The notes under the pieces are model-generated. The model made no database searches. It was given only the letters and a program-made list of their open reading frames with translations, and was not told the DNA's origin. From Felis catus (taxonomy: Eukaryota), in contig NC_058382.1 of NCBI RefSeq assembly GCF_018350175.1, positions 14,136,001 through 14,200,000 on the forward strand: 64,000 nt of DNA. Reading direction: 5' to 3'. The position numbers and the translations under genes are program-made. Below are positions 10,275 through 57,181 of this stretch, in pieces; position 1 is the stretch's first letter, and every line of letters starts with the position of its first letter.

Positions 10275-11310
10275 TAAAACACCTTTATTAAGATTTAATT
10301 CACATGCCATATAATTCACCCACTCAAAGTACACAACTTAGTGCTTTCGGCCTATTCACAGAACGTGCAAACACCATCGCAATTAATTTGGAACATTTTC
10401 ATCACCCCAAAAAGAAATCCCTAGGAGTCACCCCCTCCGTTTTCCTTCTTAGCCTCTCCCCCAGCTGTCTACAACCGCTCATCTCCTTTCTCTTTGTACC
10501 TATTTGCCTGTTCCAGACATTTCACGTAAATGGGATCGTACATCACATTGTTCTTTGTCACTGGCTTCCACCGGCTTCTTTCACTTAGCAAAAAACATCG
10601 TTTCAAGGGGTGTCCGTGTTGGAGCACGTATCTGTCTGTCATTTCCTCTTTTTATTGCCCAGTACTATTATGTACATTGGATGGGTAGACCGGGTTTCAT
10701 TTTCATTTTATCCATGCAGTCCATGGAGGACGTCTGGGTTGTTTCCATTTGGGGCTATTATGAATAATGCCTCGATGGAATCATGTGCAAGTGTTTGTAT
10801 GAACATGTGTCTTCATTTCCCTTGGACATATACCTAGGAGTGGAAAGGCTGAGTCATATGCTAACTTCATGTTTATCCTTTTGAGGAACTAACTCCCAGA
10901 ATGTTTTCCAAAGCAGCTAGCTGCATCATTCAGCACACCCATCAGTAGCGTATGAGACTTTCAGCTTCTCCACATGTGTACCAGCNNNNNNNNNNNNNNN
11001 NNNNNNNNNNNNNNNNNNNNNNNNNNNNNNNNNNNNNNNNNNNNNNNNNNNNNNNNNNNNNNNNNNNNNNNNNNNNNNNNNNNNNNNNNNNNNNNNNNNN
11101 NNNNNNNNNNNNNNNTCTTCCTTGGAGAAGTCTCTGTTCATATGTTTTGCCCAATTTTTAATTGGGTTTTATCTTTTTATTATCGAGTTGTAGGAGTCCT
11201 TTATGTATTCTAAATACAAGCCCTTTATCAGATGTATGATTTGCAAAAGTTTCCTCCCATTCTATTGATTCTCTTTTCACTTTCTTTCTTTTTTTTTTTT
11301 AATGTTTATT

Positions 11311-13282: not shown

Positions 13283-13652
13283 TGTCTTAGTCAGCTCGGG
13301 TTGCTATGACAAAATTCCATAGACTGGTGGTGTACAATAGGTATTTATTTCTCATAGTTCTGGTGGCTCCAAAGTCCAAGATAAGGTATTAATAGACTTG
13401 GCTTCCGGTGAGGGCCCTCTTCCTGGGTTGCAGACAGCTGCCTTCTTGCTGGATCCNNNNNNNNNNNNNNNNNNNNNNNNNNNNNNNNNNNNNNNNNNNN
13501 NNNNNNNNNNNNNNNNNNNNNNNNNNNNNNNNNNNNNNNNNNNNNNNNNNNNNNNNNNNNNNNNNNNNNNNNNNNNNNNNNNNNNNNNNNNNNNNNNNNN
13601 NNNNNNNNNNNNNGAATTTAGGGGGCTAGGGCACAAACATTTAGTCCATAAC
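13283..13652 (-). mobile_element. MLT1A/B/C-like solo LTR spanning gap
   Basis: tgtcttagtc...atttctcatagttctgg...aaacatttagtccataaca. Confidence 0.75.
13457..13613. other. Assembly gap (157 N)
   Basis: N run inside an MLT1-like LTR. Confidence 1.
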
Positions 13653-36286: not shown

Positions 36287-36505
36287 AGAGTGCACTAGGC
36301 ACTGTTGTAAGTGCTTTTTGTATATTATCTCATTTACTCCAGAGAACAACTCTATTATCTTAAAGTTTCCCTAAGGAAGCACAGGCTCAAGAAGTTAAAT
36401 GACTGGCCCGAGATCACACCAGACACCAGTTACCAGAGCCAGGGTTTGAACTTGCCACGGACTTTCTATAAGTGAATGACTCGCCCCACCCCCCACCCCC
36501 TGCAG

Positions 36506-37234
36506 ATGATGCTGAGCAAAGGTCTGAAGCGCAAGCGGGAGGAGGAGGAGGAGGAGGAGCCGGAGAAGGAAGCCTTGGCAGTCGACACCTGGTGGCTGGA
36601 TCCCAGGCTCCCAGCAGTGGCACAGGCACCCCCGGCTGTGCCCTCCAATTCCCTCTTAGACCTCTCGGTGCTCAAGCTCCACCACAGCCTGCGGCAGAGT
36701 GAGCCGGACCTGCGGCACCTGGTGCTGCTAGTGAACACCCTGCGGCGCATCCAGGCATCCATGGAGCCCGAAGCTACCCTGCCCTCCGTGCCCAGCCCGC
36801 CTGAGGCCCCTGGCGTGGCGGCTGACAGCCTGCTGGCCAGCTCAGACGCTGCCCTCTCAGCCTCCATGGCCAGCCTTCTGGAGGACCTCAGCCATATCGA
36901 GGGCCTGAGCCAGGCCCCCCAGCCCTTGGTGGACGAAGGGCCGCCGGGCCGCCCCAGTGGCGGGGCCCCACCCGGCCTGGGGGCCTTGGACCTGCTGGGC
37001 CCAGCCACTGGCTGTCTGCTGGACGATGAGCTCGAGGGCCTGTTTGAGGACATCGACACCTCTATGTATGACAGCGAACTTTGGGCACCAGCGTCTGAGG
37101 GCCTCAAACCCGGCCCTGAAGATGGGCCTGGCAAGGAGGAAGGTCTGGAGCTGGATGAGGCCCAGCTAGACTACCTCCTGGACGTGTTGGTGGGCACACA
37201 GGCGCTGGAGCGGCCACCGGGGCCGGGGCGCTGA
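36506..37234 (+). CDS. SERTAD1: SERTA domain-containing protein 1 (TRIP-Br1/SEI-1), 242 aa from first ATG, 241 from second
   Basis: cctgcag|ATG ATG CTG; MLSKGLKRKREEEE...LDLSVLKLHHSLRQSEPDLRHLVLLVNTLRRIQ...ALERPPGPGR*. Confidence 0.96.
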   Translation: MMLSKGLKRKREEEEEEEPEKEALAVDTWWLDPRLPAVAQAPPAVPSNSLLDLSVLKLHHSLRQSEPDLRHLVLLVNTLRRIQASMEPEATLPSVPSPPEAPGVAADSLLASSDAALSASMASLLEDLSHIEGLSQAPQPLVDEGPPGRPSGGAPPGLGALDLLGPATGCLLDDELEGLFEDIDTSMYDSELWAPASEGLKPGPEDGPGKEEGLELDEAQLDYLLDVLVGTQALERPPGPGR

Positions 37235-41694: not shown

Positions 41695-42778
41695 CTCCAC
41701 GAACTCACTCCTACATATCCTTCAGGTGCCAGTTCAAATGTCACTTCCTCCAGGAAGCTCTCCCTGCCCTTTCTGGTAGTACCAGAGTGCCAGGCCCCTC
41801 TTATAGACCTAGATCTGTCCCTCATAGTGCTTAGCTCAGTATGTAAGTATACACTCATGTCACTGATCACTTCTTTAATGTCGGCCCTCATACCCACCCC
41901 CCCCCCCCACACACACACACACTGGGAGTCTTGTGAGGGCAAAATCAGGGTCACTGCTGTGTCCTAAGCACCACTGAGCCCAGGGTTGGATACCGAAGAG
42001 GTATCTGTGAACAGCTGCTGAATGAATGTATACATGAGGAGGAAACATAAGGGGCATGTTTGGCCCGGGGACACAGCCATGAACAAGGAAGGACATAGTT
42101 GTCACCTCCTAGAAATTTCACATGTGCTGACCTCTCTCTGGATTCAGATCCTCCCCACAGGCTGTTCCCTCTGCCCATAAAACTTCCCCTCCCTCTTCTC
42201 TTGCCTAGCTCCTGTAGGTCATCCAAGTCTCAGTTCACATGTCCCCTCCTCCAGGAAGCCTTACCTGACCTCCCTTGCTAAGCTGGAGCAAGGGACCTTT
42301 CCTGGGCTCCCCCGTCAAGGCCCTGACCTTTTTCCCTGTGACTCTCTCACCCCAACCCTGGGCCATGCTGGGTCTGTGTCCCTGTTGGACTGTGAACTTT
42401 GTGAAAGCAAGCCCGGGCTATCTCGGTCACACTGTGTCCCCGGCACCATCCAGCGTAGGGCTGGACTCACTAACTGCTGACATTGGATAAAGACTGCTCC
42501 CTTTCTCCCCTCTGGTACACTTTGCCTGCATTTGTCCCCTCTCCCTGGAAGCCCCTTCCTGCACTTTTACCTGACTCCCTGCTTCTCCACCATCCAGTTT
42601 GACTTCAGAGGTCACGCCTTCCAGGAATCCTTTCCTGAGCCTGCCCCCCACCCCCACCCCATGGTACATGGTAAATGTAAGTCTGTCGGTATCTCCAATG
42701 CCCAGCAAAGAGGCTGCTGGCAAGGGCTTGTGAATGTTTGTTGAATGAATAAATGAACAGGTGGATGGTTGAATGAAT

Positions 42779-42817
<39 letters not shown>

Positions 42818-44316
42818 CACTGGGGTGAGGGGCTCCTCAGGACCATCAGCAGCCCCATTCCTTCCTCCCTTCCCAGGAGAAGGGTTCTGGCAGGGTTCTG
42901 GCCACACCCCAACCCTTGGTGGCTGCCAGGCCTGGATGGCATTTCCCAGAGCTCAGCACATTCCTGCCTTCCCTGGCGGCTGAGAGTGGGCAGGGGGCAT
43001 TTTGGAGAGAAGGGGGGAGGCCCCTAGAATTCTGGGATCCTGCCAACTTGTGCCGGGTCCCCATGCCCTCAGGGAAGTAGGCCCCAAGCTCTCGGTGTGG
43101 CGGGGAGGGGTACAGGTCCACAGAGGGGCCAGGGGGCTGGTGTGAGGGGCAAGGTTGACAACTGAGGGGAAGGCCTGGTGGCCGTGCCTGGCCAGACAAT
43201 GGGACAGAAGCTGCTGACATGCATTTTGGGGGTAATCCCCAGTTTCATCCCAGCCCTGGCCCCAGGCCTGGGCTCAGAGAGCCCGGAGCATCGGAGCCAG
43301 CGGCCGGGTGGGTGCAAGGGGCATGTGGGGGTACTTGTGCTCTCTGTGCCGCCCCCCGGGGTCTGGTGAGTCAGGGCAGGCTGGGGCCGGGGGCTGAGGG
43401 ATCAGGGTGAGGCCTGGGGGCCTTGGTTTGGGAGTTGGGCAGGTCGGGGTTCAAATCCTGGGGCTACCAATTACTTGCTATGGGTGACTTTGGGTTTCAC
43501 TTACCCTCTCTGAGCCTCCTTGACTGTTTTATGAAGGGGACAGAAGAGAGTTGCAGGGTCTCTGGGCCTAATGTGTTCCCCGTGTACCCTGGATTCTGGG
43601 AGCAGAGCTCTGGGTGCCCAGCACATTCTTTAGCACATGATGGGTGTCCCCCCAGCACAGAAACTCCATTAAACAGAGAAGTGGGGTTCCCCTGTGCCCA
43701 GGCCAAAAGCCCCTCCCCCAACAAGTCTAGCCGGCCCCCTAATTTGTGTGACTAATAATGCAAAATTCTTATAAGGAGCACTCACTCTGTGCCAGGCACT
43801 TTTTCAAGTTTTTAGCCTCTTTTAACGCATCTCATCTTCACAACAACCCCATGAGGTGGGCGCTTTTTATCACCCCTGTTTTAGAGACAAGGAAAAGGGG
43901 GCCCAGAAAGATGCCGTGGCACAGCCAGGAGGTGACTAGACTGGGATCTGAACCCAAACTGACCGGGAGAAGGAGTAGAAGGAGTTTATTTTAGGGGCCC
44001 CTGGAACCAGTGGGGCCATGCCTGGGTCTGGAACCAGGAAATAATGCCTGTCGGGTGATCAGCCTCCGAGTGGCGGGAGCAACGTCCAAGTCCCTGGAAC
44101 AAGGCTCCTGGTGAAGGTCTCAGCCCAGTCCAGGGCGCACAGCCTGTCTGAGCCGTCTTATGGCTCCCCACCCCCTTGCCTGTGGATGTAGCTGGGGGGG
44201 GGGGGGGGGCAGGGATGTTTGTTTCCCCACCACCCACTCCCTGGTGATGTCATGCCTCAGCAGCCAATGGCTGGGGTCTCTCCCTCCTCCCCCTCCCCAT
44301 TCCTTTTCCCCCCCAG

Positions 44317-44375
44317 CCTGGGGCTGAGGCTGAGCAGACGGACTGGGAGCTCTCGAGGTGTCTGGAGGCTTAGGG
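44317..44375 (+). other. PRX: PRX upstream exon (first exon of canonical transcript or internal exon of a longer one)
   Basis: Long pyrimidine tract + cag| at 44316; donor AGGG|GTAAGA; sequence resembles the periaxin 5'UTR as I recall it. Confidence 0.6.
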
Positions 44376-47300
44376 GTAAGAGATCAGCCTGTCTAACCCG
44401 ATGCTTGGCCAGGCTGAGAAGCCAAGGGAATGAGACCCAGGGTCCTGGGAGGTGCTGGCAGGTGCTGGCAGATACTGGGAGGGTACCTGGGCTCAGGAGG
44501 CAGTGTGGTGTAGGAGTTAAAGGCACAGACTTTGGAGCCAGACCCTGGGTTCGAATCTCAATGTTCCCCTCTTTCTGGCTATGCAGTCTTGGGCAAGATG
44601 CTGCACCCTTTGTACCTCTGCTTTTCCATCTGTGAAATGGGCTGATGGAGAGTAAATGAATTGCTGCTTACCAAGAGCTGGGCAGGATGCCTGGGGTGGA
44701 GCAGGCTTTTTGGTGCTTGGAATAGGGTGCTGGGGAGGCAGCACTGATCCCGTTGGTAGGAGGCAGGTGCCTGAGCTGGGTTTTGTCCCTCACCCAGAGT
44801 TCCCCTTGGCTAAGAGAGAAAGTGGGGCCACTGGTTAGCAAAACCTGGATACGAGACACTTGAGATGCACAGCCTACCCTCCAACTGCTGTCAAAGACTA
44901 GTGTATATTGCCTGAGCACTTACTCTATACCAGGAATATTCTAAGCACCTGCTGTTATTTTGTGAATCCTCAAAGCCACTCTTAGTGGCTCCATCTCACA
45001 GATGAGGAAACTGAGGCCCTGGGAGGTGAAATACTTTGCCCAAGTATTCAAACCTGAGAAATGTGAGAGCGGGGACTAACTGAGGGAGCTGGGAGGCCCC
45101 TGCCAGCACGCCTCCCCCTCTGCCTCACAGATGGTCTAGGGGCCAGGATGAGTCCGGTCAACTCCTCACTCCCACTGCTGAGGGCACCAGATCACTGGCA
45201 GTTAGGGAAGCTGAAGCTCTGGGTAGGCAGAGCTCCTAAATGGGGTTGGCACCAGCCATGGGGAGAAGAGGGTACAGAGGGGCAAATCTAGGGGTTTCCT
45301 CAGCAGGCCCAGCTCAGCTGAAGGGCCCAGGGCCCAAATGACAGGCACTCACCCCAGCCCCTCTGAAGGGCATTGGCGGCATCATAAATTGGATTCTAAG
45401 TGGCACCTTCCTCCGGGAGGTATTGTGAGGATTTAATGAGCCAAGGTAGGGAAGGGTCTTTGCACATAGTAAGTGCTCAAGAAATGGGGACTCCGAGAAT
45501 TCTAGAAGCTCAGGAATGTACCAGGGGAGTGCCAAAGGAACCACTCAAGAATGGCTCTTGGCACCTGGGCGGCCCTGCCTGGACTTGATTCACCGGGGGA
45601 ACCCCAATAGATCTTCCCCTAACACAGTCAGGGACCCCCAGGAACCTCCCCCTCCCCTCCCCTGCCTAATGGGACGGGTAGGGCTGGGAACAGAGAGTGC
45701 CCGGGGTGGACGGGGTTTCCTTCCGAAGCCACCCCCACCCCATGCCAGGACCTGGGTATGTGGCTCAGGAAGGGCACAGTTAGGCTAAATATAACCTGGG
45801 TTGGGCGGCTGTCCCAGGCAGGGATGAGGAAGGAGGGCACTCTCTCTTGCTCCCGCCCCAGCTAAGCTTCCTGTGCCAGCCTCTGGGTGTGACCCTCGCT
45901 GCCCTGGCCTGAAACCGGGAGCTTGCGGTCCAGGAGAGCCTCCCCTCCATCTCTACCACCTCCTACACGTAGCAGGCTCTCCCACCTCCAGCTCAGGATG
46001 CTACGTTGTGTCAGGGACTCAGTCTTGCAGACCCAAGTTGTCTGTTACCGTCGTATCCTGTCACTGTGATATCTGAACCCTAACTTTCTCGTAAGTAAAA
46101 TGGGGGTACTGAGGCCACATCTGTAAAGTGCCTGCCCAGCCCAGAGTCGGCACCAGAGAGGTCCTTCTAAAAATGCCCGTTTCGGGGCACCCTCAATCCC
46201 CATGCCCTCCCCCCAGTTGTTTTGCTGCTTGGGCTCCTCCAGTGCTCAGAGCCACCAATACGAGTTCAGTTACAGAGTTGGGGGTCAAGGGCAGGGTCTT
46301 GGCTGTGTGACCCCAGACAGGTCACTTCCCCACGCTGAGCCTCAGTTTCCAACTCTAAAACAGCCACCGCATTCAGGGTGATTTTGAGACTTATGGGTGC
46401 CAGCCCTGGGTCCAGTTCAGAGGAAATGCCACAGATGTGGGAGCTGAGGGCTCAGAGGGGAGCCTGGGGAAGGCCATGGAGACCAGGACTCCTAGGAGCA
46501 CCAGAGAGGGGCCCTCTGCTACTGTGGGGTGCCTGCCAGTGGAGTGGGTACAGCTGGAGCATTGAGGGGTCCCTGTGTCCTCTATCTTGGCCAGTGGTGG
46601 GCTATGAAGAGCCATTGTGCGGCTGGGGGTGGGTGGGCAGGGGCGGAATGTGACTGGGCCCAGCAGATGGGCCATTGTTTGAGGGAATGTGCCGCGTGAG
46701 GCCTGACCTTTCCCTGTAGAGTGGGGGTTGGCGGGTTGGCATGCCAGGTGGGGGCTGGGAGGACAAGGCCAGCGTTGGCATGAGGAGGGGTAGAGAGACA
46801 GTATCCACTCCCCAGAAAGGTCTGTTGGGGAATCTGCATGGGAATCCCAGTTCTGCCGCCTTCTCACTGTGCTGTGTGACCTTATGCAAGGTCCTTGGCC
46901 TCTCTGAGAGGCTAGGGTTTTCTGTAGTGAGAAGCACAGGGCTGATGAAGAGTAACCACTCCAACACCCATTGGTTATTATCATCCGTATAAGAGTCTGG
47001 AACTCTCAGATAAGTTCAAGTCCTGGCTTAGCCATTTGTGACCATCCGTGCATGGCTTCCCTTCTCCCAGCCTCAGGTGTCTTTTCCGTTAATGGGCTCA
47101 ACGATTGTCTTGACCTCACAAGAGTGTTCTGAGGTTTATGTGCAATGACCCCTGTGGGACATCTGACACAAGATCGGGACCACGGGAAGTTCTTAGTCAC
47201 AATGATAGTAAGTGCTTCTGAAGCCCCTCCATGTACCTGGAATTTTAGATTTGCTAACGTATTTGACAAAGTAGGTGCTCTCCTTCTCCCCCGTTTTCTA

Positions 47301-47608
47301 GACGAGGAAGCTGAGGCACAGAGAGATGAGGTGATTTGCCCACAGGGAGTACGTGGGAGTGGTTAGGATGGGTTTATACGGAATGTGGCTCCCTCGCTCC
47401 GCCCCGGTGTTTGGTGGAGTGGCTCTGCTGTCGGACAGTCCTAGGAGTCAGCTCTGGCTTTACTGTTTGCTGTAAAAAGGTCTTCTAAGCCTCGGTCTCC
47501 CTGCCTGCGCTATGGGGATAGAATATTGACAGCACGCAGGAAGGGGCAGACATGTAGGAAGCAATTGGTGGGGTCAGCTGATGGTAATGCTCACCTTCTT
47601 CTTCTTAG

Positions 47609-47652
47609 AGCCCCGGACCCAGGAGGCCCAAGGAGCTGGAGGTGATCCTGAG
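47609..47652 (+). other. PRX: PRX 5' exon (44 nt)
   Basis: cttcttcttag|AGCCCCGG...CCTGAG|gtgagc. Confidence 0.8.
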
Positions 47653-47735
47653 GTGAGCATTGGCCGGTGCCACATGCCCCTCCCTGTCCCTCCCTGGCCT
47701 GCTTGGAGCCTCATGCCCTGGTCTCTTCCTGGCAG

Positions 47736-47834
47736 GCAGCAAGACCCCAGAGGAAGGGCGCGAGCCCCGCAGACGACTGCGCAGTACCCCAGGCTGGGCT
47801 CCTGTTAGGAGGGGGTGCCTGTGCTCAGGCAGCG
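47736..47834 (+). other. PRX: PRX 5' exon (99 nt)
   Basis: ctcttcctggcag|GCAGCAAG...GCAGCG|gtgaga. Confidence 0.75.
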
Positions 47835-48056
47835 GTGAGAGGGCAGGGGTGGGGGGCCCTGCTCCCCTTCTGATACCAATCTTGACCTCTCCCTCCATGC
47901 CCAGCCTCCTTCTCTCATCCCTTCCCGGCCTCAAGCCTCCACCCCTGCCCCCCACAGGCTCAGAGGCAGCTGCTCCATGCAGAGCTGAAGCTGGTCCTGC
48001 AGCAGAAGGGAGAGAGGAAGCAGGAGCCTGGGGCCCAGGTGACTCCCAGCAGCGCC

Positions 48057-48083
48057 ATGGAGGCCAGGAGCCGGAGTGCTGAG
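48057..48083 (+). CDS. PRX: Periaxin first canonical coding exon (exon starts 47958): MEARSRSAE
   Basis: Strong Kozak gcgccATGG; donor GAG|gtgagt. Confidence 0.95.
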
Positions 48084-52980: not shown

Positions 52981-53557
52981 GCCCCACTCTTCCACACCCT
53001 GGGCCAGCCTTGCCCTCTGTCTTGTCACTAACCCAACTCTAATCCCACCTTCTGCCTCCTGTTCCCCACTCCTAAACTCCTCCCTGGGGAGGGAGACCCG
53101 CCCATCTCAGACCTTCACCCACTTTGGAGAGGAGGCAGCTCTAGGCATGCCGGGGGTCCTGAACCGAAGGGACTCCAAACCAGGGAGGCCAGGTTCAAAC
53201 CTGAGTGCTGCTCACTTACTGCTGAGTGACCCTGGACAAGTTTCTTTCCCTTTCTGGGCCTCAGTTTCCCCATTTCTAGAATGAAGGTATTGGGGAGAAT
53301 CCTGGATGAGGACCTAGAAGTCTTGGGTCCCAGTTCCCACACTCCTGTTGACTCTTTGTCAGATGCTAAGTGAAAGTCTTTGCCTTAGGGGGCCGGTAAT
53401 GGTGAAATGACAGGAAGGAAGTGGGGATGGTGATTTGGGGACGAGATGCTTCGTCCGACACATCCCCAGCCTGGTGTAATGCCAGATGGGGATCCCCCCC
53501 GTCTACCTCGAGCCTCCCACTGTCCCACCGCCTCCCGCATCTCTCCTCTCTCCCCAG

Positions 53558-56500
53558 AACATCCAGAGTCTGTCCCCTGTGAAGAAGAAGAAGATGGTGG
53601 TACCCGGGGCCCTGGGGGCCCCTGCAGAGCTGGCCCCTGTTGACGTCGAATTCTCCTTTCCCAAGTTCTCCCGTCTACGTCGGGGCCTCAAAGCTGAGGC
53701 TGTCAAGGGTCCTGTCCCAGCTGCCCCCGCCCGCCGGCGCCTCCAGCTGCCTCGGCTGCGCGTCCGGGAAGTGGCGGAAGAGGCCCAGGCGGCCCGGCTG
53801 GCCGCCGCCGCTCCTCCCCCAAGGAAAGCCAAAGTGGAGGCTGAGGTGGCAGCAGGAGCCCGTTTCACAGCCCCCCAGGTGGAGCTGGTTGGGCCCCGGC
53901 TGCCTGGCGCCGAGGTGGGTGTCCCCCAGGTCTCAGCCCCCAAGGGGCTGGGAGAGGTGGCCCTCCACCTGCCAAGCCTTGGACTAGGCGCCCCAGCCCC
54001 ACCTGCTGTGGAGCCCGCAGCCCTAGGGATCCAGGTCCCCCAGGTGGAGCTGCCCGCCTTGCCCTCGCTCCCCGCTCTGCCCACGCTGCCCTGCCTGGAG
54101 ACCCGGGAAGGGGCTGTGGTGGTGACGGTGCCCACCCTGGACGTGGCAGCGCCCACCGTAGGGGTGGACCTGGCCTTGCCGGGTGCGGAGGTGGAGGCCA
54201 GAGCAGAGGCACCTGAGGTGGCCCTGAAGATGCCCCGCCTCAGTTTCCCCCGCTTTGGGGCTCGAGCGAAGGAAGTTGCTGAGGCCAAGGTGGCCAAGGC
54301 CAGCCCCGAGGCCAGGGTGAAGGGGCCCAGACTTCGAATGCCCACCTTTGGGCTTTCTCTCCTGGAGCCCCGGCCCGCTGCCGCTGAAGCTGCTGTCGAG
54401 AGCAAGCTGAAGCTGCCCACCATCAAGATGCCCTCCTTTGGCATTGGGGTCTCGGCCCCTGAGGTCAAGATGCCCAAGGGGCCGGAGGTGAAGCTCCCCA
54501 AGGCTCCTGAAGTCAAGCTCCCGAAGGTGCCCGAGGCAGCCCTTCCAGCCGTGCAGCTCCCCGAGGTGGAGCTCCCCAAAGTGTCAGAGATAAAGCTCCC
54601 GAAGGTGCCAGAGATGGCCGTGCCCGAGGTGCGGCTTCCAGAGGTGCAGCTGCCGAAAGTCCCCGAGATGAAGCTCCCCGAGATGAAGCTCCCGAAGGTG
54701 TCCGAGATGGCCGTGCCGGAGGTGCGACTCCCGGAGGTGCAGCTCCCGAAAGTCCCAGAGATGAAGCTCCCGAAGGTGCCCGAGATGAAACTCCCGAAGG
54801 TGCCCGAGATGGCGGTGCCCGAGGTGCAGCTCCCAGAAGTACAGCTCCCGAAAGTCCCGGAGATGAAGCTCCCAGAAGTGAAGCTCCCGAAGATGCCCGA
54901 GATGGCCGTGCCCGAGGTGCGACTCCCGGAGGTGCAGCTGCCCAAGGTCTCAGAGATGAAAGTCCCTGACGTGAAACTCCCCGAGATAAAACTCCCCAAG
55001 GTGCCGGAGATGGCCGTGCCTGATGTCCACCTGCCAGAGGTGCAGCTGCCAAAGGTGTCCGAGATGCGGCTGCCGGAAGTGCAGGTGCCGAAGGTCCCAG
55101 ATGTGCATCTTCCGAAGGCACCCGAGGTGAAGCTGCCCAAGGCTCCGGAGGTACGGCTGAAAGCCGAGCAGGCAGAGGCGGTGGAATTTGGCTTCAAAAT
55201 GCCCAAGATGACCATGCCCAAGCTGGGGAGGGCAGAGTCCCCACCACGAGGCAAGCCAGACGAGGCCAGGGCTGAGGCCCCAGGGAAGCTGGTAATGCTC
55301 CCCTGTTTGCAGCCAGAGGCGGGCACCGAGGCTCGGGTGGGTGTCCCCTCTCTCTCACTGCCCTCGGTGGAGCTAGACCTGCCGAGGGCCCTCAGCCTGG
55401 AGGGGCAGGTCCCAGCAGCCGAAGCGGGCAAGGTGGAGCGGGCAGAGAGCCCCGGGGCAGCGGCAGGGGTCGGGGAAGTGGCCTTCCGGATGCCCTCCGT
55501 TGAAATCGTCACTCCACAGCTGCCCACGGTGGAAGTGGAGGAAGGGCGGCTAGAGGCGATGGAGATGAAAGCCAAGCCCTCCTCCAAGTTCTCTTTGCCC
55601 AAGTTTGGACTCTCGGGGCCCAAAGTGGCCAAGGCGGAGGCTGAGGGGGCTGGGCGAGCCACCAAGCTGAAGGTGTCCAAGTTTGCCATCTCACTCCCCA
55701 AGGCCCGAGCGGGGACTGAGGCCGAGGCCAAAGGGGCAGGGGAGGCAGGCCTCCTGCCCGCCCTCGATCTGTCCATCCCGCAGCTCAGCCTGGATGCCCA
55801 TCTGCCCACGGGCAAGGTGGAGGTGGCCGGGGCTGATGTCAAGCTCAAGGGGCCCAGGTTTGCCCTGCCCAAGTTTGGGGTCAAAGGCCGGGACACTGAG
55901 GCGGGAGAAGCAGTGTCAGGGGGGGCTGAGTTGGAGGGCAAGGGCTGGGGTTGGGACAGGAAGGTGAAGGCGTCCAAGCTGAAGATGCCCTCCTTTGGGC
56001 TGGCTCGAGGAAAGGAAGCTGAGATCCAGGGCGGGCGTGGCAGCCCCGGAGAAAAGCCAGAGTCCCTGGCCGGCCAGCTTAAGATCCCCGAAGTGGAGCT
56101 GGTCACCCTGGGGGCCCAGGAGGACGGGGGCGCCGAGGGGGCAGCGGCCGTCAGTGGAGTTCGGCTACCAGGCCTGCAAGTATCCACGACCAGGCAGGCG
56201 GGTGCCGAGGGCCAGGAAGGGGGGCTGAGGATGCCCCTGGGTATCTCCCTGCCCCAGGTGGAGCTGCCCGGCCTCGGGGAGGCCGGCCTGGGTGCCACCC
56301 CCGGGCAGCAGGTCAAGGGTGCAGCCCCTTCAGCAGAGGGCACAGCAGGCTACAGGGTCCAGGTGCCTCAGGTGACCTTGTCTCTGCCTGGAGCCCAGGT
56401 GGCAGGTGGTGAGCTGTTGGTAGGTGAGGGCGTCTTCAAGATGCCTGCTGTGACGGTGCCCCAGCTTGAGCTGGACGTGGGGCTGAGCCGGGAGGCGCAG

Positions 56501-57181
56501 GTTGGGGAGGCAGCCACCGGCGAGGGTGGCTTGAGGCTGAAGATGCCCACACTGGGGGCCAGGGCCGAAGCTGGGGAAGAGGGGCCTGGAGACCAGCCCC
56601 CAGGGGCCGAGCGCACCTTCCGCCTCTCGCTGCCCGACGTGGAGCTCTCGCCACCTGCTGTGGGCAGCCACGCCGAGTACCAGGTGGCAGAGGGCGAGGG
56701 GGATGCCGGACACAAGCTCAAGGTGCGGCTGCCCCGGTTCGGTCTGGTTCGGGCCAAGGAGGGCGTGGAAGAGGGTGAAAAGACCAAGAGCCCAAAACTC
56801 AGGCTGCCCCGAGTGGGCTTCAGCCAGAGCGAGGCAGTCACTGGGGAAGGCTCCCCCAGCCCCGAGGAGGAGGAGGAGGAGGGCGGCGGGGAAGGGGCCC
56901 CCGGGCGCCGAGGCAGAGTCCGAGTCCGCCTGCCCCGCGTGGGCCTGGCCACCCCTTCCAAGGCCTCTCGGGGACAGGAGGGCGACGCAGCCCCCAAGTC
57001 CCCTGGCGGGGAGAAGTCACCCAAGTTCCGCTTCCCCCGGGTGTCCCTAAGCCCCAAGACCCGGAGTGGGAGCGGGGACCGGGAGGAGGGTGGATTCCGG
57101 GTCCGGCTGCCCAGCGTAGGGTTTTCGGAGACAGGGGCTCCAGGCCCTGCCAGGATGGAGGGGGCGCAGGCTGTCATCTGA
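53558..57181 (+). CDS. PRX: L-periaxin giant last exon (1207 aa); L-periaxin total 1334 aa
   Basis: ctccccag|AAC ATC; [13 protein letters not shown] basic NLS region, PEV/PKV repeat domain, acidic C-terminal region, ends [11 protein letters not shown]. Confidence 0.97.
54458..55160 (+). repeat. PRX: Coding tandem repeat of periaxin ([27 protein letters not shown] units)
   Basis: Five EMAVP(E/D)VxLPEVQL units interspersed with 5-aa and 8-aa units, visible at DNA level. Confidence 0.92.

What the first reader, a model, noticed from the sequence alone, without database searches (positions are those of the whole stretch)
43199..48056. Hidden N-terminal extension of periaxin: five exons splice into a 156-codon stop-free frame ending at the canonical Met
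The exons are 43199-43365 (acaATGG strong Kozak; TG|GTGAGT), 44317-44375, 47609-47652, 47736-47834 and 47958-48056. They total 167+59+44+99+99=468 nt with every junction phase-compatible (TG|C Cys, G|AG Glu, 0, 0). Translation: MGQKLLTCILGVIPSFIPALAPGLGSESPEHRSQRPGGCKGHVGVLVLSVPPPGV-C-LGLRLSRRTGSSRGVWRLR-E-PRTQEAQGAGGDPE-AARPQRKGASPADDCAVPQAGLLLGGGACAQAA-AQRQLLHAELKLVLQQKGERKQEPGAQVTPSSA-MEARSRSAE. The 99-nt exon is frame-neutral, and AQRQLLHAELKLVLQQK looks like an amphipathic helix. Gly2 plus Cys8 could give myristoyl/palmitoyl membrane anchoring, which canonical periaxin lacks. In-frame ATGs at 44252 and 44267 offer shorter versions. The PDZ relative AHNAK2 has extra N-terminal coding exons, and I recall (unverified) distinct 5' periaxin forms in lens. 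Caveat: the ATG lies in a SOX motif (ACAATG) and the donor in an AP-1 motif (TGAGTCA), so the first segment may be only an enhancer.
Basis: partly seen in the sequence, partly recalled or inferred. Interest (0 to 1): 0.75.

Follow-up and report, generated by a model that had tools for sequence, protein, structure and literature searches.

The report
Periaxin upstream in-frame leader, already annotated
The cat periaxin gene has leader exons that stay open in frame with its start codon, plus an upstream alternative first exon; public gene models in about 45 mammals, the cat included, already predict longer periaxin proteins from them, but nobody has shown that the extra piece is made.

Summary
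The window is Felis catus PRX.

Segments 2-5 are the known non-coding exons 1-3 and the 5' part of exon 4. Their 44+99+99 = 242 nt match the human leader length implied by c.-243G>A.

The extension is not hidden.
- Cat RefSeq isoform X2 (P0006) has a 95-aa extension.
- 29 species from three placental superorders carry this form. 25 of them are exactly 95 aa.

The myristoylation consensus fails.

Coding status is unresolved. The extension's amino-acid conservation resembles non-PDZ periaxin, and all indels seen are in frame, but broken frames would never be annotated, so this evidence is biased.

The parts
43199..43365 (+). Alternative first exon 1a of PRX. The 5' end is unknown. The main donor follows 43365 and a second donor follows 43307.
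   Evidence: Donor CTG|gtgagt at 43365 is used by cat RefSeq X2; 43323-43365 plus the leader reproduces the first 95 aa of P0006 exactly. Donor CGG|gtgggt at 43307 corresponds to the one used in the right whale (P0326) and Pipistrellus kuhlii (P0127) models.
43199..43201 (+). It is in frame with periaxin only through donor 43307 to exon 2, or through 43365 to 44317. Otherwise it opens a 55-codon upstream ORF that ends at a junction TGA.
   Evidence: Four models start here: P0127, P0158/P0161, P0278 and P0326. The same ATG can be inferred in porcupine from the off-frame model P0108.
43323..43365 (+). ATG and first 14 codons (MWGYLCSLCRPPGS) of the 95-aa extension predicted in 29 species.
   Evidence: MWGYLC is invariant in the 25 species that have exactly 95 aa.
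44317..44375 (+). 3' part of the canonical non-coding exon 1. The true 5' end was not determined.
   Evidence: The donor GGG|gtaaga at 44375 equals human c.-243, the last base of non-coding exon 1 (PMC12957058). A CCAAT box at 44263-44267 overlaps ATG 44267. Cat model P0007 reads straight through from ATG 44252.
47138..47207 (+). A further alternative first exon (1b), seen only in felid models. It gives the 104-aa extension of cat RefSeq isoform X1.
   Evidence: 47138-47207 plus the leader reproduces the first 104 aa of P0152 (XP_011288189.2) exactly. The donor is ATA|gtaagt.
47609..47652 (+). Non-coding exon 2 (44 nt). All alternative first exons splice into it.
47736..47834 (+). Non-coding exon 3 (99 nt, frame-neutral). 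Some models skip it. It is the least conserved part of the extension.
   Evidence: 6 of 33 columns are invariant.
47958..48083 (+). Exon 4: 99 nt of leader plus the canonical ATG at 48057 and 9 codons (MEARSRSAE).
   Evidence: PMC10352492 states that coding starts in exon 4. There is a run of 15 invariant residues at its 5' end.
47977..47988 (+). Out-of-frame three-codon upstream ORF (ATG CAG AGC TGA). It holds the only ATG in the spliced exon 2-4 leader, and it lies inside the invariant block.

Best explanation
This is the 5' end of cat PRX. Segment 1 overlaps a real alternative first exon (1a). Exons 2-4 (242 nt) contain no stop in the frame of the canonical ATG, so any first exon that supplies an ATG in the right phase gives an N-terminally extended periaxin.

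The best-supported product is a 95-aa extension. It starts at ATG 43323 and splices 43365 to 47609. It places a conserved Cys-containing head (MWGYLCSLC) and a conserved helix-prone block (AQRQLLHAELKLVLQQK) in front of the PDZ domain.

My committed reading is that transcripts from an upstream alternative promoter are translated from this ATG into a minor extended proteoform, while exon 1 transcripts, which carry no in-frame ATG if the TSS lies near 44317, give canonical periaxin.

Shown: exon identities, frames, and exact agreement with public cat models. Inferred: that exon 1a is transcribed in cat, where its TSS lies, that the extension is translated, and that it is under protein-level selection.
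For: - The human variant c.-243G>A lies at the donor of non-coding exon 1, which implies a 242-nt leader. That equals the cat's 44+99+99 nt. This point does not depend on any extension annotation.
- Coding is in exons 4-7.
- Window coordinates reproduce the cat models P0006, P0152 and P0007 exactly.
- 29 species carry the 95-aa form, and 25 of them are exactly 95 aa. They include dugong, tenrec, sengi, macaques, New World monkeys, a lemur, marmot, gundi, bats, pangolins, horse, bovids and cetaceans.
- Every length change seen in exons 2-4 is a multiple of three.
- The extension's identity to cat is 72-93%, against 78-90% for the non-PDZ rest of the protein.
- Replacements per codon are 1.46 in the extension and 0.83 in an exon 7 control.
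- Over the last 43 nt of exon 1a I decoded cat versus Caprinae using models read in two frames. There are 5 nucleotide changes. In the MWGYLC frame 3 are synonymous and only one codon is replaced. The chance of one or fewer replaced codons from 5 random changes is 0.03.
Against: - I have no transcript, ribosome or peptide evidence.
- Annotation pipelines extend a CDS to the furthest in-frame ATG, and species with broken frames would not appear, so the cross-species count is biased by ascertainment.
- A strong-context ATG at 43199 would pre-empt ATG 43323 if the TSS lies upstream of it.
- The listed dog and pig cluster members show no such isoform, which suggests exon 1a is rarely used.
- Off-frame porcupine models show roughly equal numbers of second- and third-position changes in exons 2-3 (my hand decoding of the alignments).
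- The codon-position split of replacements did not distinguish coding from non-coding.
- PRX is absent from a human proteomic set of 192 translated upstream regions.
- The extension is rich in A, G, P and Q, as is typical of a translated GC-rich UTR.
Confidence: 0.5

Rival explanations
1. The leader is purely non-coding. Exons 1a, 1, 2, 3 and the 5' part of exon 4 are 5'UTR. Their conservation serves RNA-level or promoter functions, for example splice sites, translational control, or the small upstream ORF at 47977. The frame is open because the DNA is GC-rich and conserved. The extended 'isoforms' come from the annotation rule that picks the longest ORF.
For: - The leader is 68% G+C and would be open 15% of the time by chance.
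- Several mutually exclusive N-termini are predicted from the same open leader, including starts inside intron 1 at ATG 47587. That is what an annotation rule would produce.
- The literature describes only L- and S-periaxin from one promoter.
- PRX is not in the proteomic 5'UTR set or in the PhyloCSF-driven additions held as text.
- Exons 2 and 3 have few invariant columns: 1 of 15 and 6 of 33.
Against: - The length is exactly conserved: 95 aa in 25 of 29 species, and a 242-nt leader in human.
- Amino-acid divergence is only about 1.75 times that of true exon 7 coding sequence. A typical UTR would not be that conserved.
- ATG 43323 and the MWGYLC codons are conserved across three superorders.
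- Changes between cat and Caprinae are biased towards synonymous ones.
Confidence: 0.4
2. One reading: ATG 43199, then 43365 to 44317, then exons 2-4. This gives a 156-aa extension that is myristoylated at Gly2 and palmitoylated at Cys8.
For: - Sheep GenBank models P0158 and P0161 have exactly this path, with a 159-aa extension.
- The ATG is conserved in cat, Lycaon, sheep, right whale and Pipistrellus, with no indels over 36 codons.
- It has a strong Kozak context, and the acceptor at 44317 has a good pyrimidine tract.
Against: - Only one species' submitter annotation shows this path.
- The two other clean models that start at this ATG use a different donor and skip exon 1.
The MWGYLC segment diverges 0-14% in sister species.
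- PROSITE PS00008 fails in cat, sheep and whale.
- Residues 5-24 are strongly hydrophobic (mean Kyte-Doolittle 1.9) and look like a signal peptide, which makes no sense for a cytoplasmic scaffold protein.
Confidence: 0.05
3. Segment 1 is only a conserved enhancer or promoter element and is not transcribed as an exon. Models that use it are cross-species propagation of one prediction.
For:
- I have no read evidence.
- Three different frames of the segment are used by different annotators.
Against: - The same donor is used in RefSeq models of many separately annotated species, with a perfect gtgagt.
- The EGR2 site described for Prx is intronic, not upstream (PMC3413122).
Confidence: 0.1

Closest known systems
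Published PRX gene structure (7 exons, exons 1-3 non-coding, ATG in exon 4; L- and S-periaxin)
   Same: Segments 2-5 correspond to exons 1-4. The leader length of 242 nt is identical to human. Canonical MEARSRSAE is followed by the PDZ domain.
   Different: The published structure has one promoter and no coding sequence upstream of exon 4's ATG. Here an extra upstream first exon (1a) and a first exon seen only in felid models (1b) are present, with in-frame ATGs.
RefSeq/UniProt predicted periaxin isoforms with N-terminal extensions (for example cat X2 P0006, cat X1 XP_011288189.2, macaque X1, horse X1)
   Same: Their extension sequences (95, 104 and 122 aa) are reproduced exactly from the window.
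   Different: Only sheep GenBank models match that.
N-terminal proteoforms made by alternative promoters or upstream start codons (reviewed in PMC13082882; surveyed in PMC11317171 and PMC9789052)
   Same: An open 5' leader in frame with the main ATG, GC-rich, with an alternative first exon supplying the start.
   Different: The start is an AUG, and the frame is open across placental orders. Two thirds of the human cases in PMC11317171 are not conserved beyond simians. PRX is not among the cases with peptide support.
Regulatory upstream ORFs
   Same: ATG 43199 in exon 1a to exon 2 transcripts, ATG 43323 in exon 1a to 44317 transcripts, and ATG 47977 all open short ORFs that end before or overlap the main start.
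   Different: I have no evidence that any of them is translated or regulates periaxin output.

Membership tests
Known PRX 5'UTR exons 1-4 | Exon 1 donor lies 242 nt of spliced leader upstream of the ATG (human c.-243 is the last base of exon 1) | tested here: met
   44+99+99 = 242 nt between 44375 and 48057.
Known PRX 5'UTR exons 1-4 | Coding starts in exon 4 with a 27-nt coding part, followed by PDZ-coding exons and a large last exon | tested here: met
   48057-48083 encodes MEARSRSAE followed by gtgagt. Pfam finds PDZ. The exon 7 ORF is at 53486-57181.
N-terminally extended proteoform from an alternative first exon | Upstream AUG in frame with no intervening stop in the spliced transcript | tested here: met
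   43323-43365 plus exons 2-4 gives 285 nt and 95 codons, all open.
N-terminally extended proteoform from an alternative first exon | A transcript containing the junction exists in the organism | not testable with these tools
Only public gene models support the junction.
N-terminally extended proteoform from an alternative first exon | Purifying selection at the protein level in that frame | tested here: inconclusive
   Protein-only comparison: identity is like non-PDZ periaxin, indels are in frame, and one 43-nt two-frame decoding gives P = 0.03. The sample is ascertained.
N-terminally extended proteoform from an alternative first exon | Ribosome footprints or peptides upstream of the annotated Met | not tested
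   No data were reachable. Peptide strings were not found in the paper library. PRX is absent from the PMC11317171 lists.
N-myristoylated proteins (PROSITE PS00008) | Gly at position 2 | tested here: met
   MGQKLL in cat. Gly2 is kept in Lycaon, sheep, right whale and Pipistrellus.
N-myristoylated proteins (PROSITE PS00008) | Small uncharged residue [STAGCN] at the fifth position counted from the Gly | tested here: not met
   That position is Leu. The pattern fails for cat, sheep and whale.

The most novel reading that the evidence does not exclude
Placental mammals keep a second, alternative-promoter form of periaxin. Its 95-residue head carries a conserved two-cysteine N-terminus (MWGYLCSLC) that might be S-palmitoylated for membrane anchoring, and a conserved amphipathic helix just before the PDZ domain. 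The 'non-coding' exons 2-4 would then be coding in some tissues, and 5'UTR variants in CMT4F or cataract patients could be missense or frameshift changes in that form.
Probability: 0.3. Interest if true: 0.6.

Novelty: already known. Interest (0 to 1): 0.3.

Why it matters
PRX mutations cause CMT4F, Dejerine-Sottas neuropathy and dominant cataract. Diagnostic pipelines treat exons 1-3 as non-coding, and a 5'UTR variant (c.-243G>A) has just been proposed as pathogenic (PMC12957058).

If the extended form is real, variants in exons 2-4 would need reading as coding changes. A head in front of the PDZ dimerisation domain could also alter periaxin targeting.

If it is only an annotation artefact, dozens of RefSeq 'isoform X1/X2' records overstate the periaxin proteome.

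Either way, the sequence feature itself is already in public annotation. What is missing is an experiment.

Tried and rejected
- **Orthologue DNA.** I chose not to scan metagenome contigs, because host hits at this locus would be few and could be human.
- **Human data.** I left the human protein P0026 out of all comparisons and fetched no human contig.
- **Spliced models.** I joined exons only inside local scripts and compared them with protein ids the database had returned. Searches used contiguous references or those ids.
- **Word search with P0127 residues 1-40** found only itself. Other models with that start were hidden as cluster members.
- **AlphaFold2 on alignment A1**. Mean pLDDT was 41 and even the PDZ domain did not fold. 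Only the exon 4 block came out as a helix, at pLDDT 61-75. I gave this no weight.
- **Codon-position split of replacements**. The extension and a true coding control both match the null, so the test is uninformative.
- **Literature.** No paper describes an extended periaxin. PRX is absent from PhyloSET, but that pipeline drops anything overlapping RefSeq coding exons, so the absence says nothing. It is also absent from the held supplements of the whole-genome PhyloCSF paper, which is weak evidence.
- **SOX10/EGR2 enhancer idea for segment 1.** The published Prx site is intronic.
- **The search of earlier findings** returned nothing on this locus.
Full report
**What the window is**

The large ORF at 53486-57181 is 100% identical to Felis catus periaxin isoforms. 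A SERTA-motif ORF lies upstream at 36476-37234. This is the order expected for SERTAD1 followed by PRX. The finding sits at the 5' end of cat PRX.

**Checking the observation**

The five segments are present as described. They are 167+59+44+99+99 = 468 nt. Every junction has a GT donor and a pyrimidine-tract AG acceptor, and the joined frame runs without a stop into ATG 48057. Exon 4 ends at 48083.

Openness in the cat alone is not remarkable. Shuffles leave the 242-nt exon 2-4 leader open 15% of the time and the whole 468 nt open 1.6% of the time.

**What segments 2-5 are**

PRX has seven exons with coding sequence in exons 4-7 (PMC10352492). A human variant, c.-243G>A, destroys the donor of non-coding exon 1 (PMC12957058). 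The human spliced leader from exon 2 to the ATG is therefore 242 nt. The cat's 44+99+99 nt give exactly the same length.

So segments 3-5 are exons 2, 3 and the leader part of exon 4, and 44375 is the exon 1 donor. A CCAAT box at 44263-44267 overlaps ATG 44267, which suggests that the usual start site lies downstream, near 44317. I could not map it.

**The extension is not hidden**

Periaxin proteins in the public collection fall into several classes upstream of MEARSRSAE.

- **95-aa form.** This is the commonest. It begins MWGYLCSLCRPPGS and then continues through exons 2-4. The stretch 43323-43365 plus exons 2-4 reproduces the first 95 residues of cat RefSeq isoform X2 (P0006) exactly.
- **104-aa form.** Cat isoform X1 (XP_011288189.2) uses another first exon, at 47138-47207.
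- **122-aa forms.** Cat UniProt models P0007 and P0010 read from ATG 44252 straight through exon 1.
- **Intronic-start forms.** Other species' models start at an intronic ATG 22 nt before exon 2 (cat 47587).

This variety is what one expects if pipelines extend a CDS to the furthest in-frame ATG over an open leader.

**Breadth of the 95-aa form**

The 95-aa form occurs in 29 species:
- felids, arctic fox, horses, bovids, porpoise and minke whale;
- two pangolins and eight bats;
- macaque, baboon, three New World monkeys and a lemur;
- marmot and gundi;
- dugong, tenrec and sengi.

A 62-aa version without exon 3 occurs in horse, Desmodus and hamster.

25 of the 29 are exactly 95 aa. MWGYLC and a run of 15 residues in the exon 4 block are invariant. 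Exons 2 and 3 vary much more.

ATG 43199 is used in four models.
- Right whale RefSeq X1 (P0326) and Pipistrellus kuhlii (P0127) use a donor matching cat 43307 (CGG|gtgggt) and join exon 2.
- A Lycaon model is irregular.

A curious toggle exists. With the 43365-to-exon 2 splice, the 43199 frame stops at a TGA spanning the junction and the 43323 frame continues into periaxin. With the 43365-to-44317 splice, the reverse holds.

The MWGYLC segment differs by 0-14% in sister species. The myristoylation pattern fails at Leu. The N-terminus is strongly hydrophobic and resembles a signal peptide.

**Is the extension coding?**

I could only compare proteins.

For coding:
- Identity to cat is 72-93%, much like the non-PDZ part of periaxin at 78-90%.
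- Replacements per codon are 1.46, against 0.83 in a true exon 7 control.
- All length changes seen are multiples of three.
- The human leader length is identical to the cat's.
- Over the last 43 nt of exon 1a, models in two frames let me decode five changes between cat and Caprinae. Three are synonymous in the MWGYLC frame and only one codon is replaced. The chance of that from random changes is 0.03.

Against coding:
- Species with broken frames would never be annotated, so the sample is biased.
- With a nonsense-to-missense opportunity of 0.06-0.07 and at least 122 replacements, about 8 stops would be expected somewhere on the tree, and they would be invisible here.
- The listed dog and pig cluster members show no such isoform.
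- Off-frame porcupine models suggest equal numbers of second- and third-position changes in exons 2-3 (my hand decoding).
- The codon-position test could not discriminate.
- No paper reports the form.
- PRX is not among 192 proteomically supported human upstream regions.

**Verdict**

The structural reading is secure. Whether the 95-aa head is made and matters is about even odds. The feature is already in public annotation for this genome, so novelty is low. The open question is experimental.

- Letters of 42723-42763 were kept out of all searches.
- The human protein P0026 was left out, and no human contig was handled.

Noticed in passing
window 47138-47207: A further alternative first exon, seen only in felid models (cat, jaguar, leopard). 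It opens with ATG 47138 and its donor is ATA|gtaagt. It gives the 104-aa head of cat RefSeq periaxin isoform X1.
   Followed up: yes
window 47587-47608: An ATG sits 22 nt upstream of exon 2, inside the acceptor's pyrimidine tract (MLTFFFL). It is in frame with the leader and is used as the start in models of rhino, bovids, fruit bat, seals, cheetah and ferret. These are probably artefacts of transcript models that begin in intron 1.
   Followed up: partly
window 47977-47988: This is the only ATG in the spliced exon 2-4 leader. It opens a three-codon out-of-frame ORF (MQS stop) inside the 15-residue invariant block. The ATG and TGA would survive the A-to-E change seen in bats and murids. It offers an alternative, RNA-level reason for conservation here.
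   Followed up: no
window 44194-44271: A run of 18 G, then a CRE-like tgatgtca, then a CCAAT box overlapping ATG 44267. This looks like the core promoter of canonical exon 1.
   Followed up: no
other mammals' periaxin models (for example P0001, P0050, P0214): Many species have models that replace MEARSRSAE with another 9-residue first coding exon (MATPRRPPQ-like) joined to exon 5. I found no match to it in the cat window at one mismatch or fewer.
   Followed up: partly
P0296 (Cricetulus griseus, 1909 aa): A submitter model fuses two SERTA-domain genes to periaxin, entering at exon 4 in the extension frame. It is a read-through model that again exploits the open leader.
   Followed up: no
window 43440-43960: The intron between exon 1a and exon 1 contains sequence that reads like two MIR-type SINE copies. 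This is by eye only, and I ran no repeat search.
   Followed up: no
window 10986-11115 and 13457-13613: Two runs of N (130 and 157 bases).
   Followed up: no
protein clusters of P0077 and P0117: The 90%-identity clusters of periaxin also hold neighbouring-gene products (HIPK4, SERTAD1) and 147-aa S-periaxins. Cluster membership is therefore not a safe guide to isoform content. Representatives also hide members with different N-termini.
   Followed up: partly
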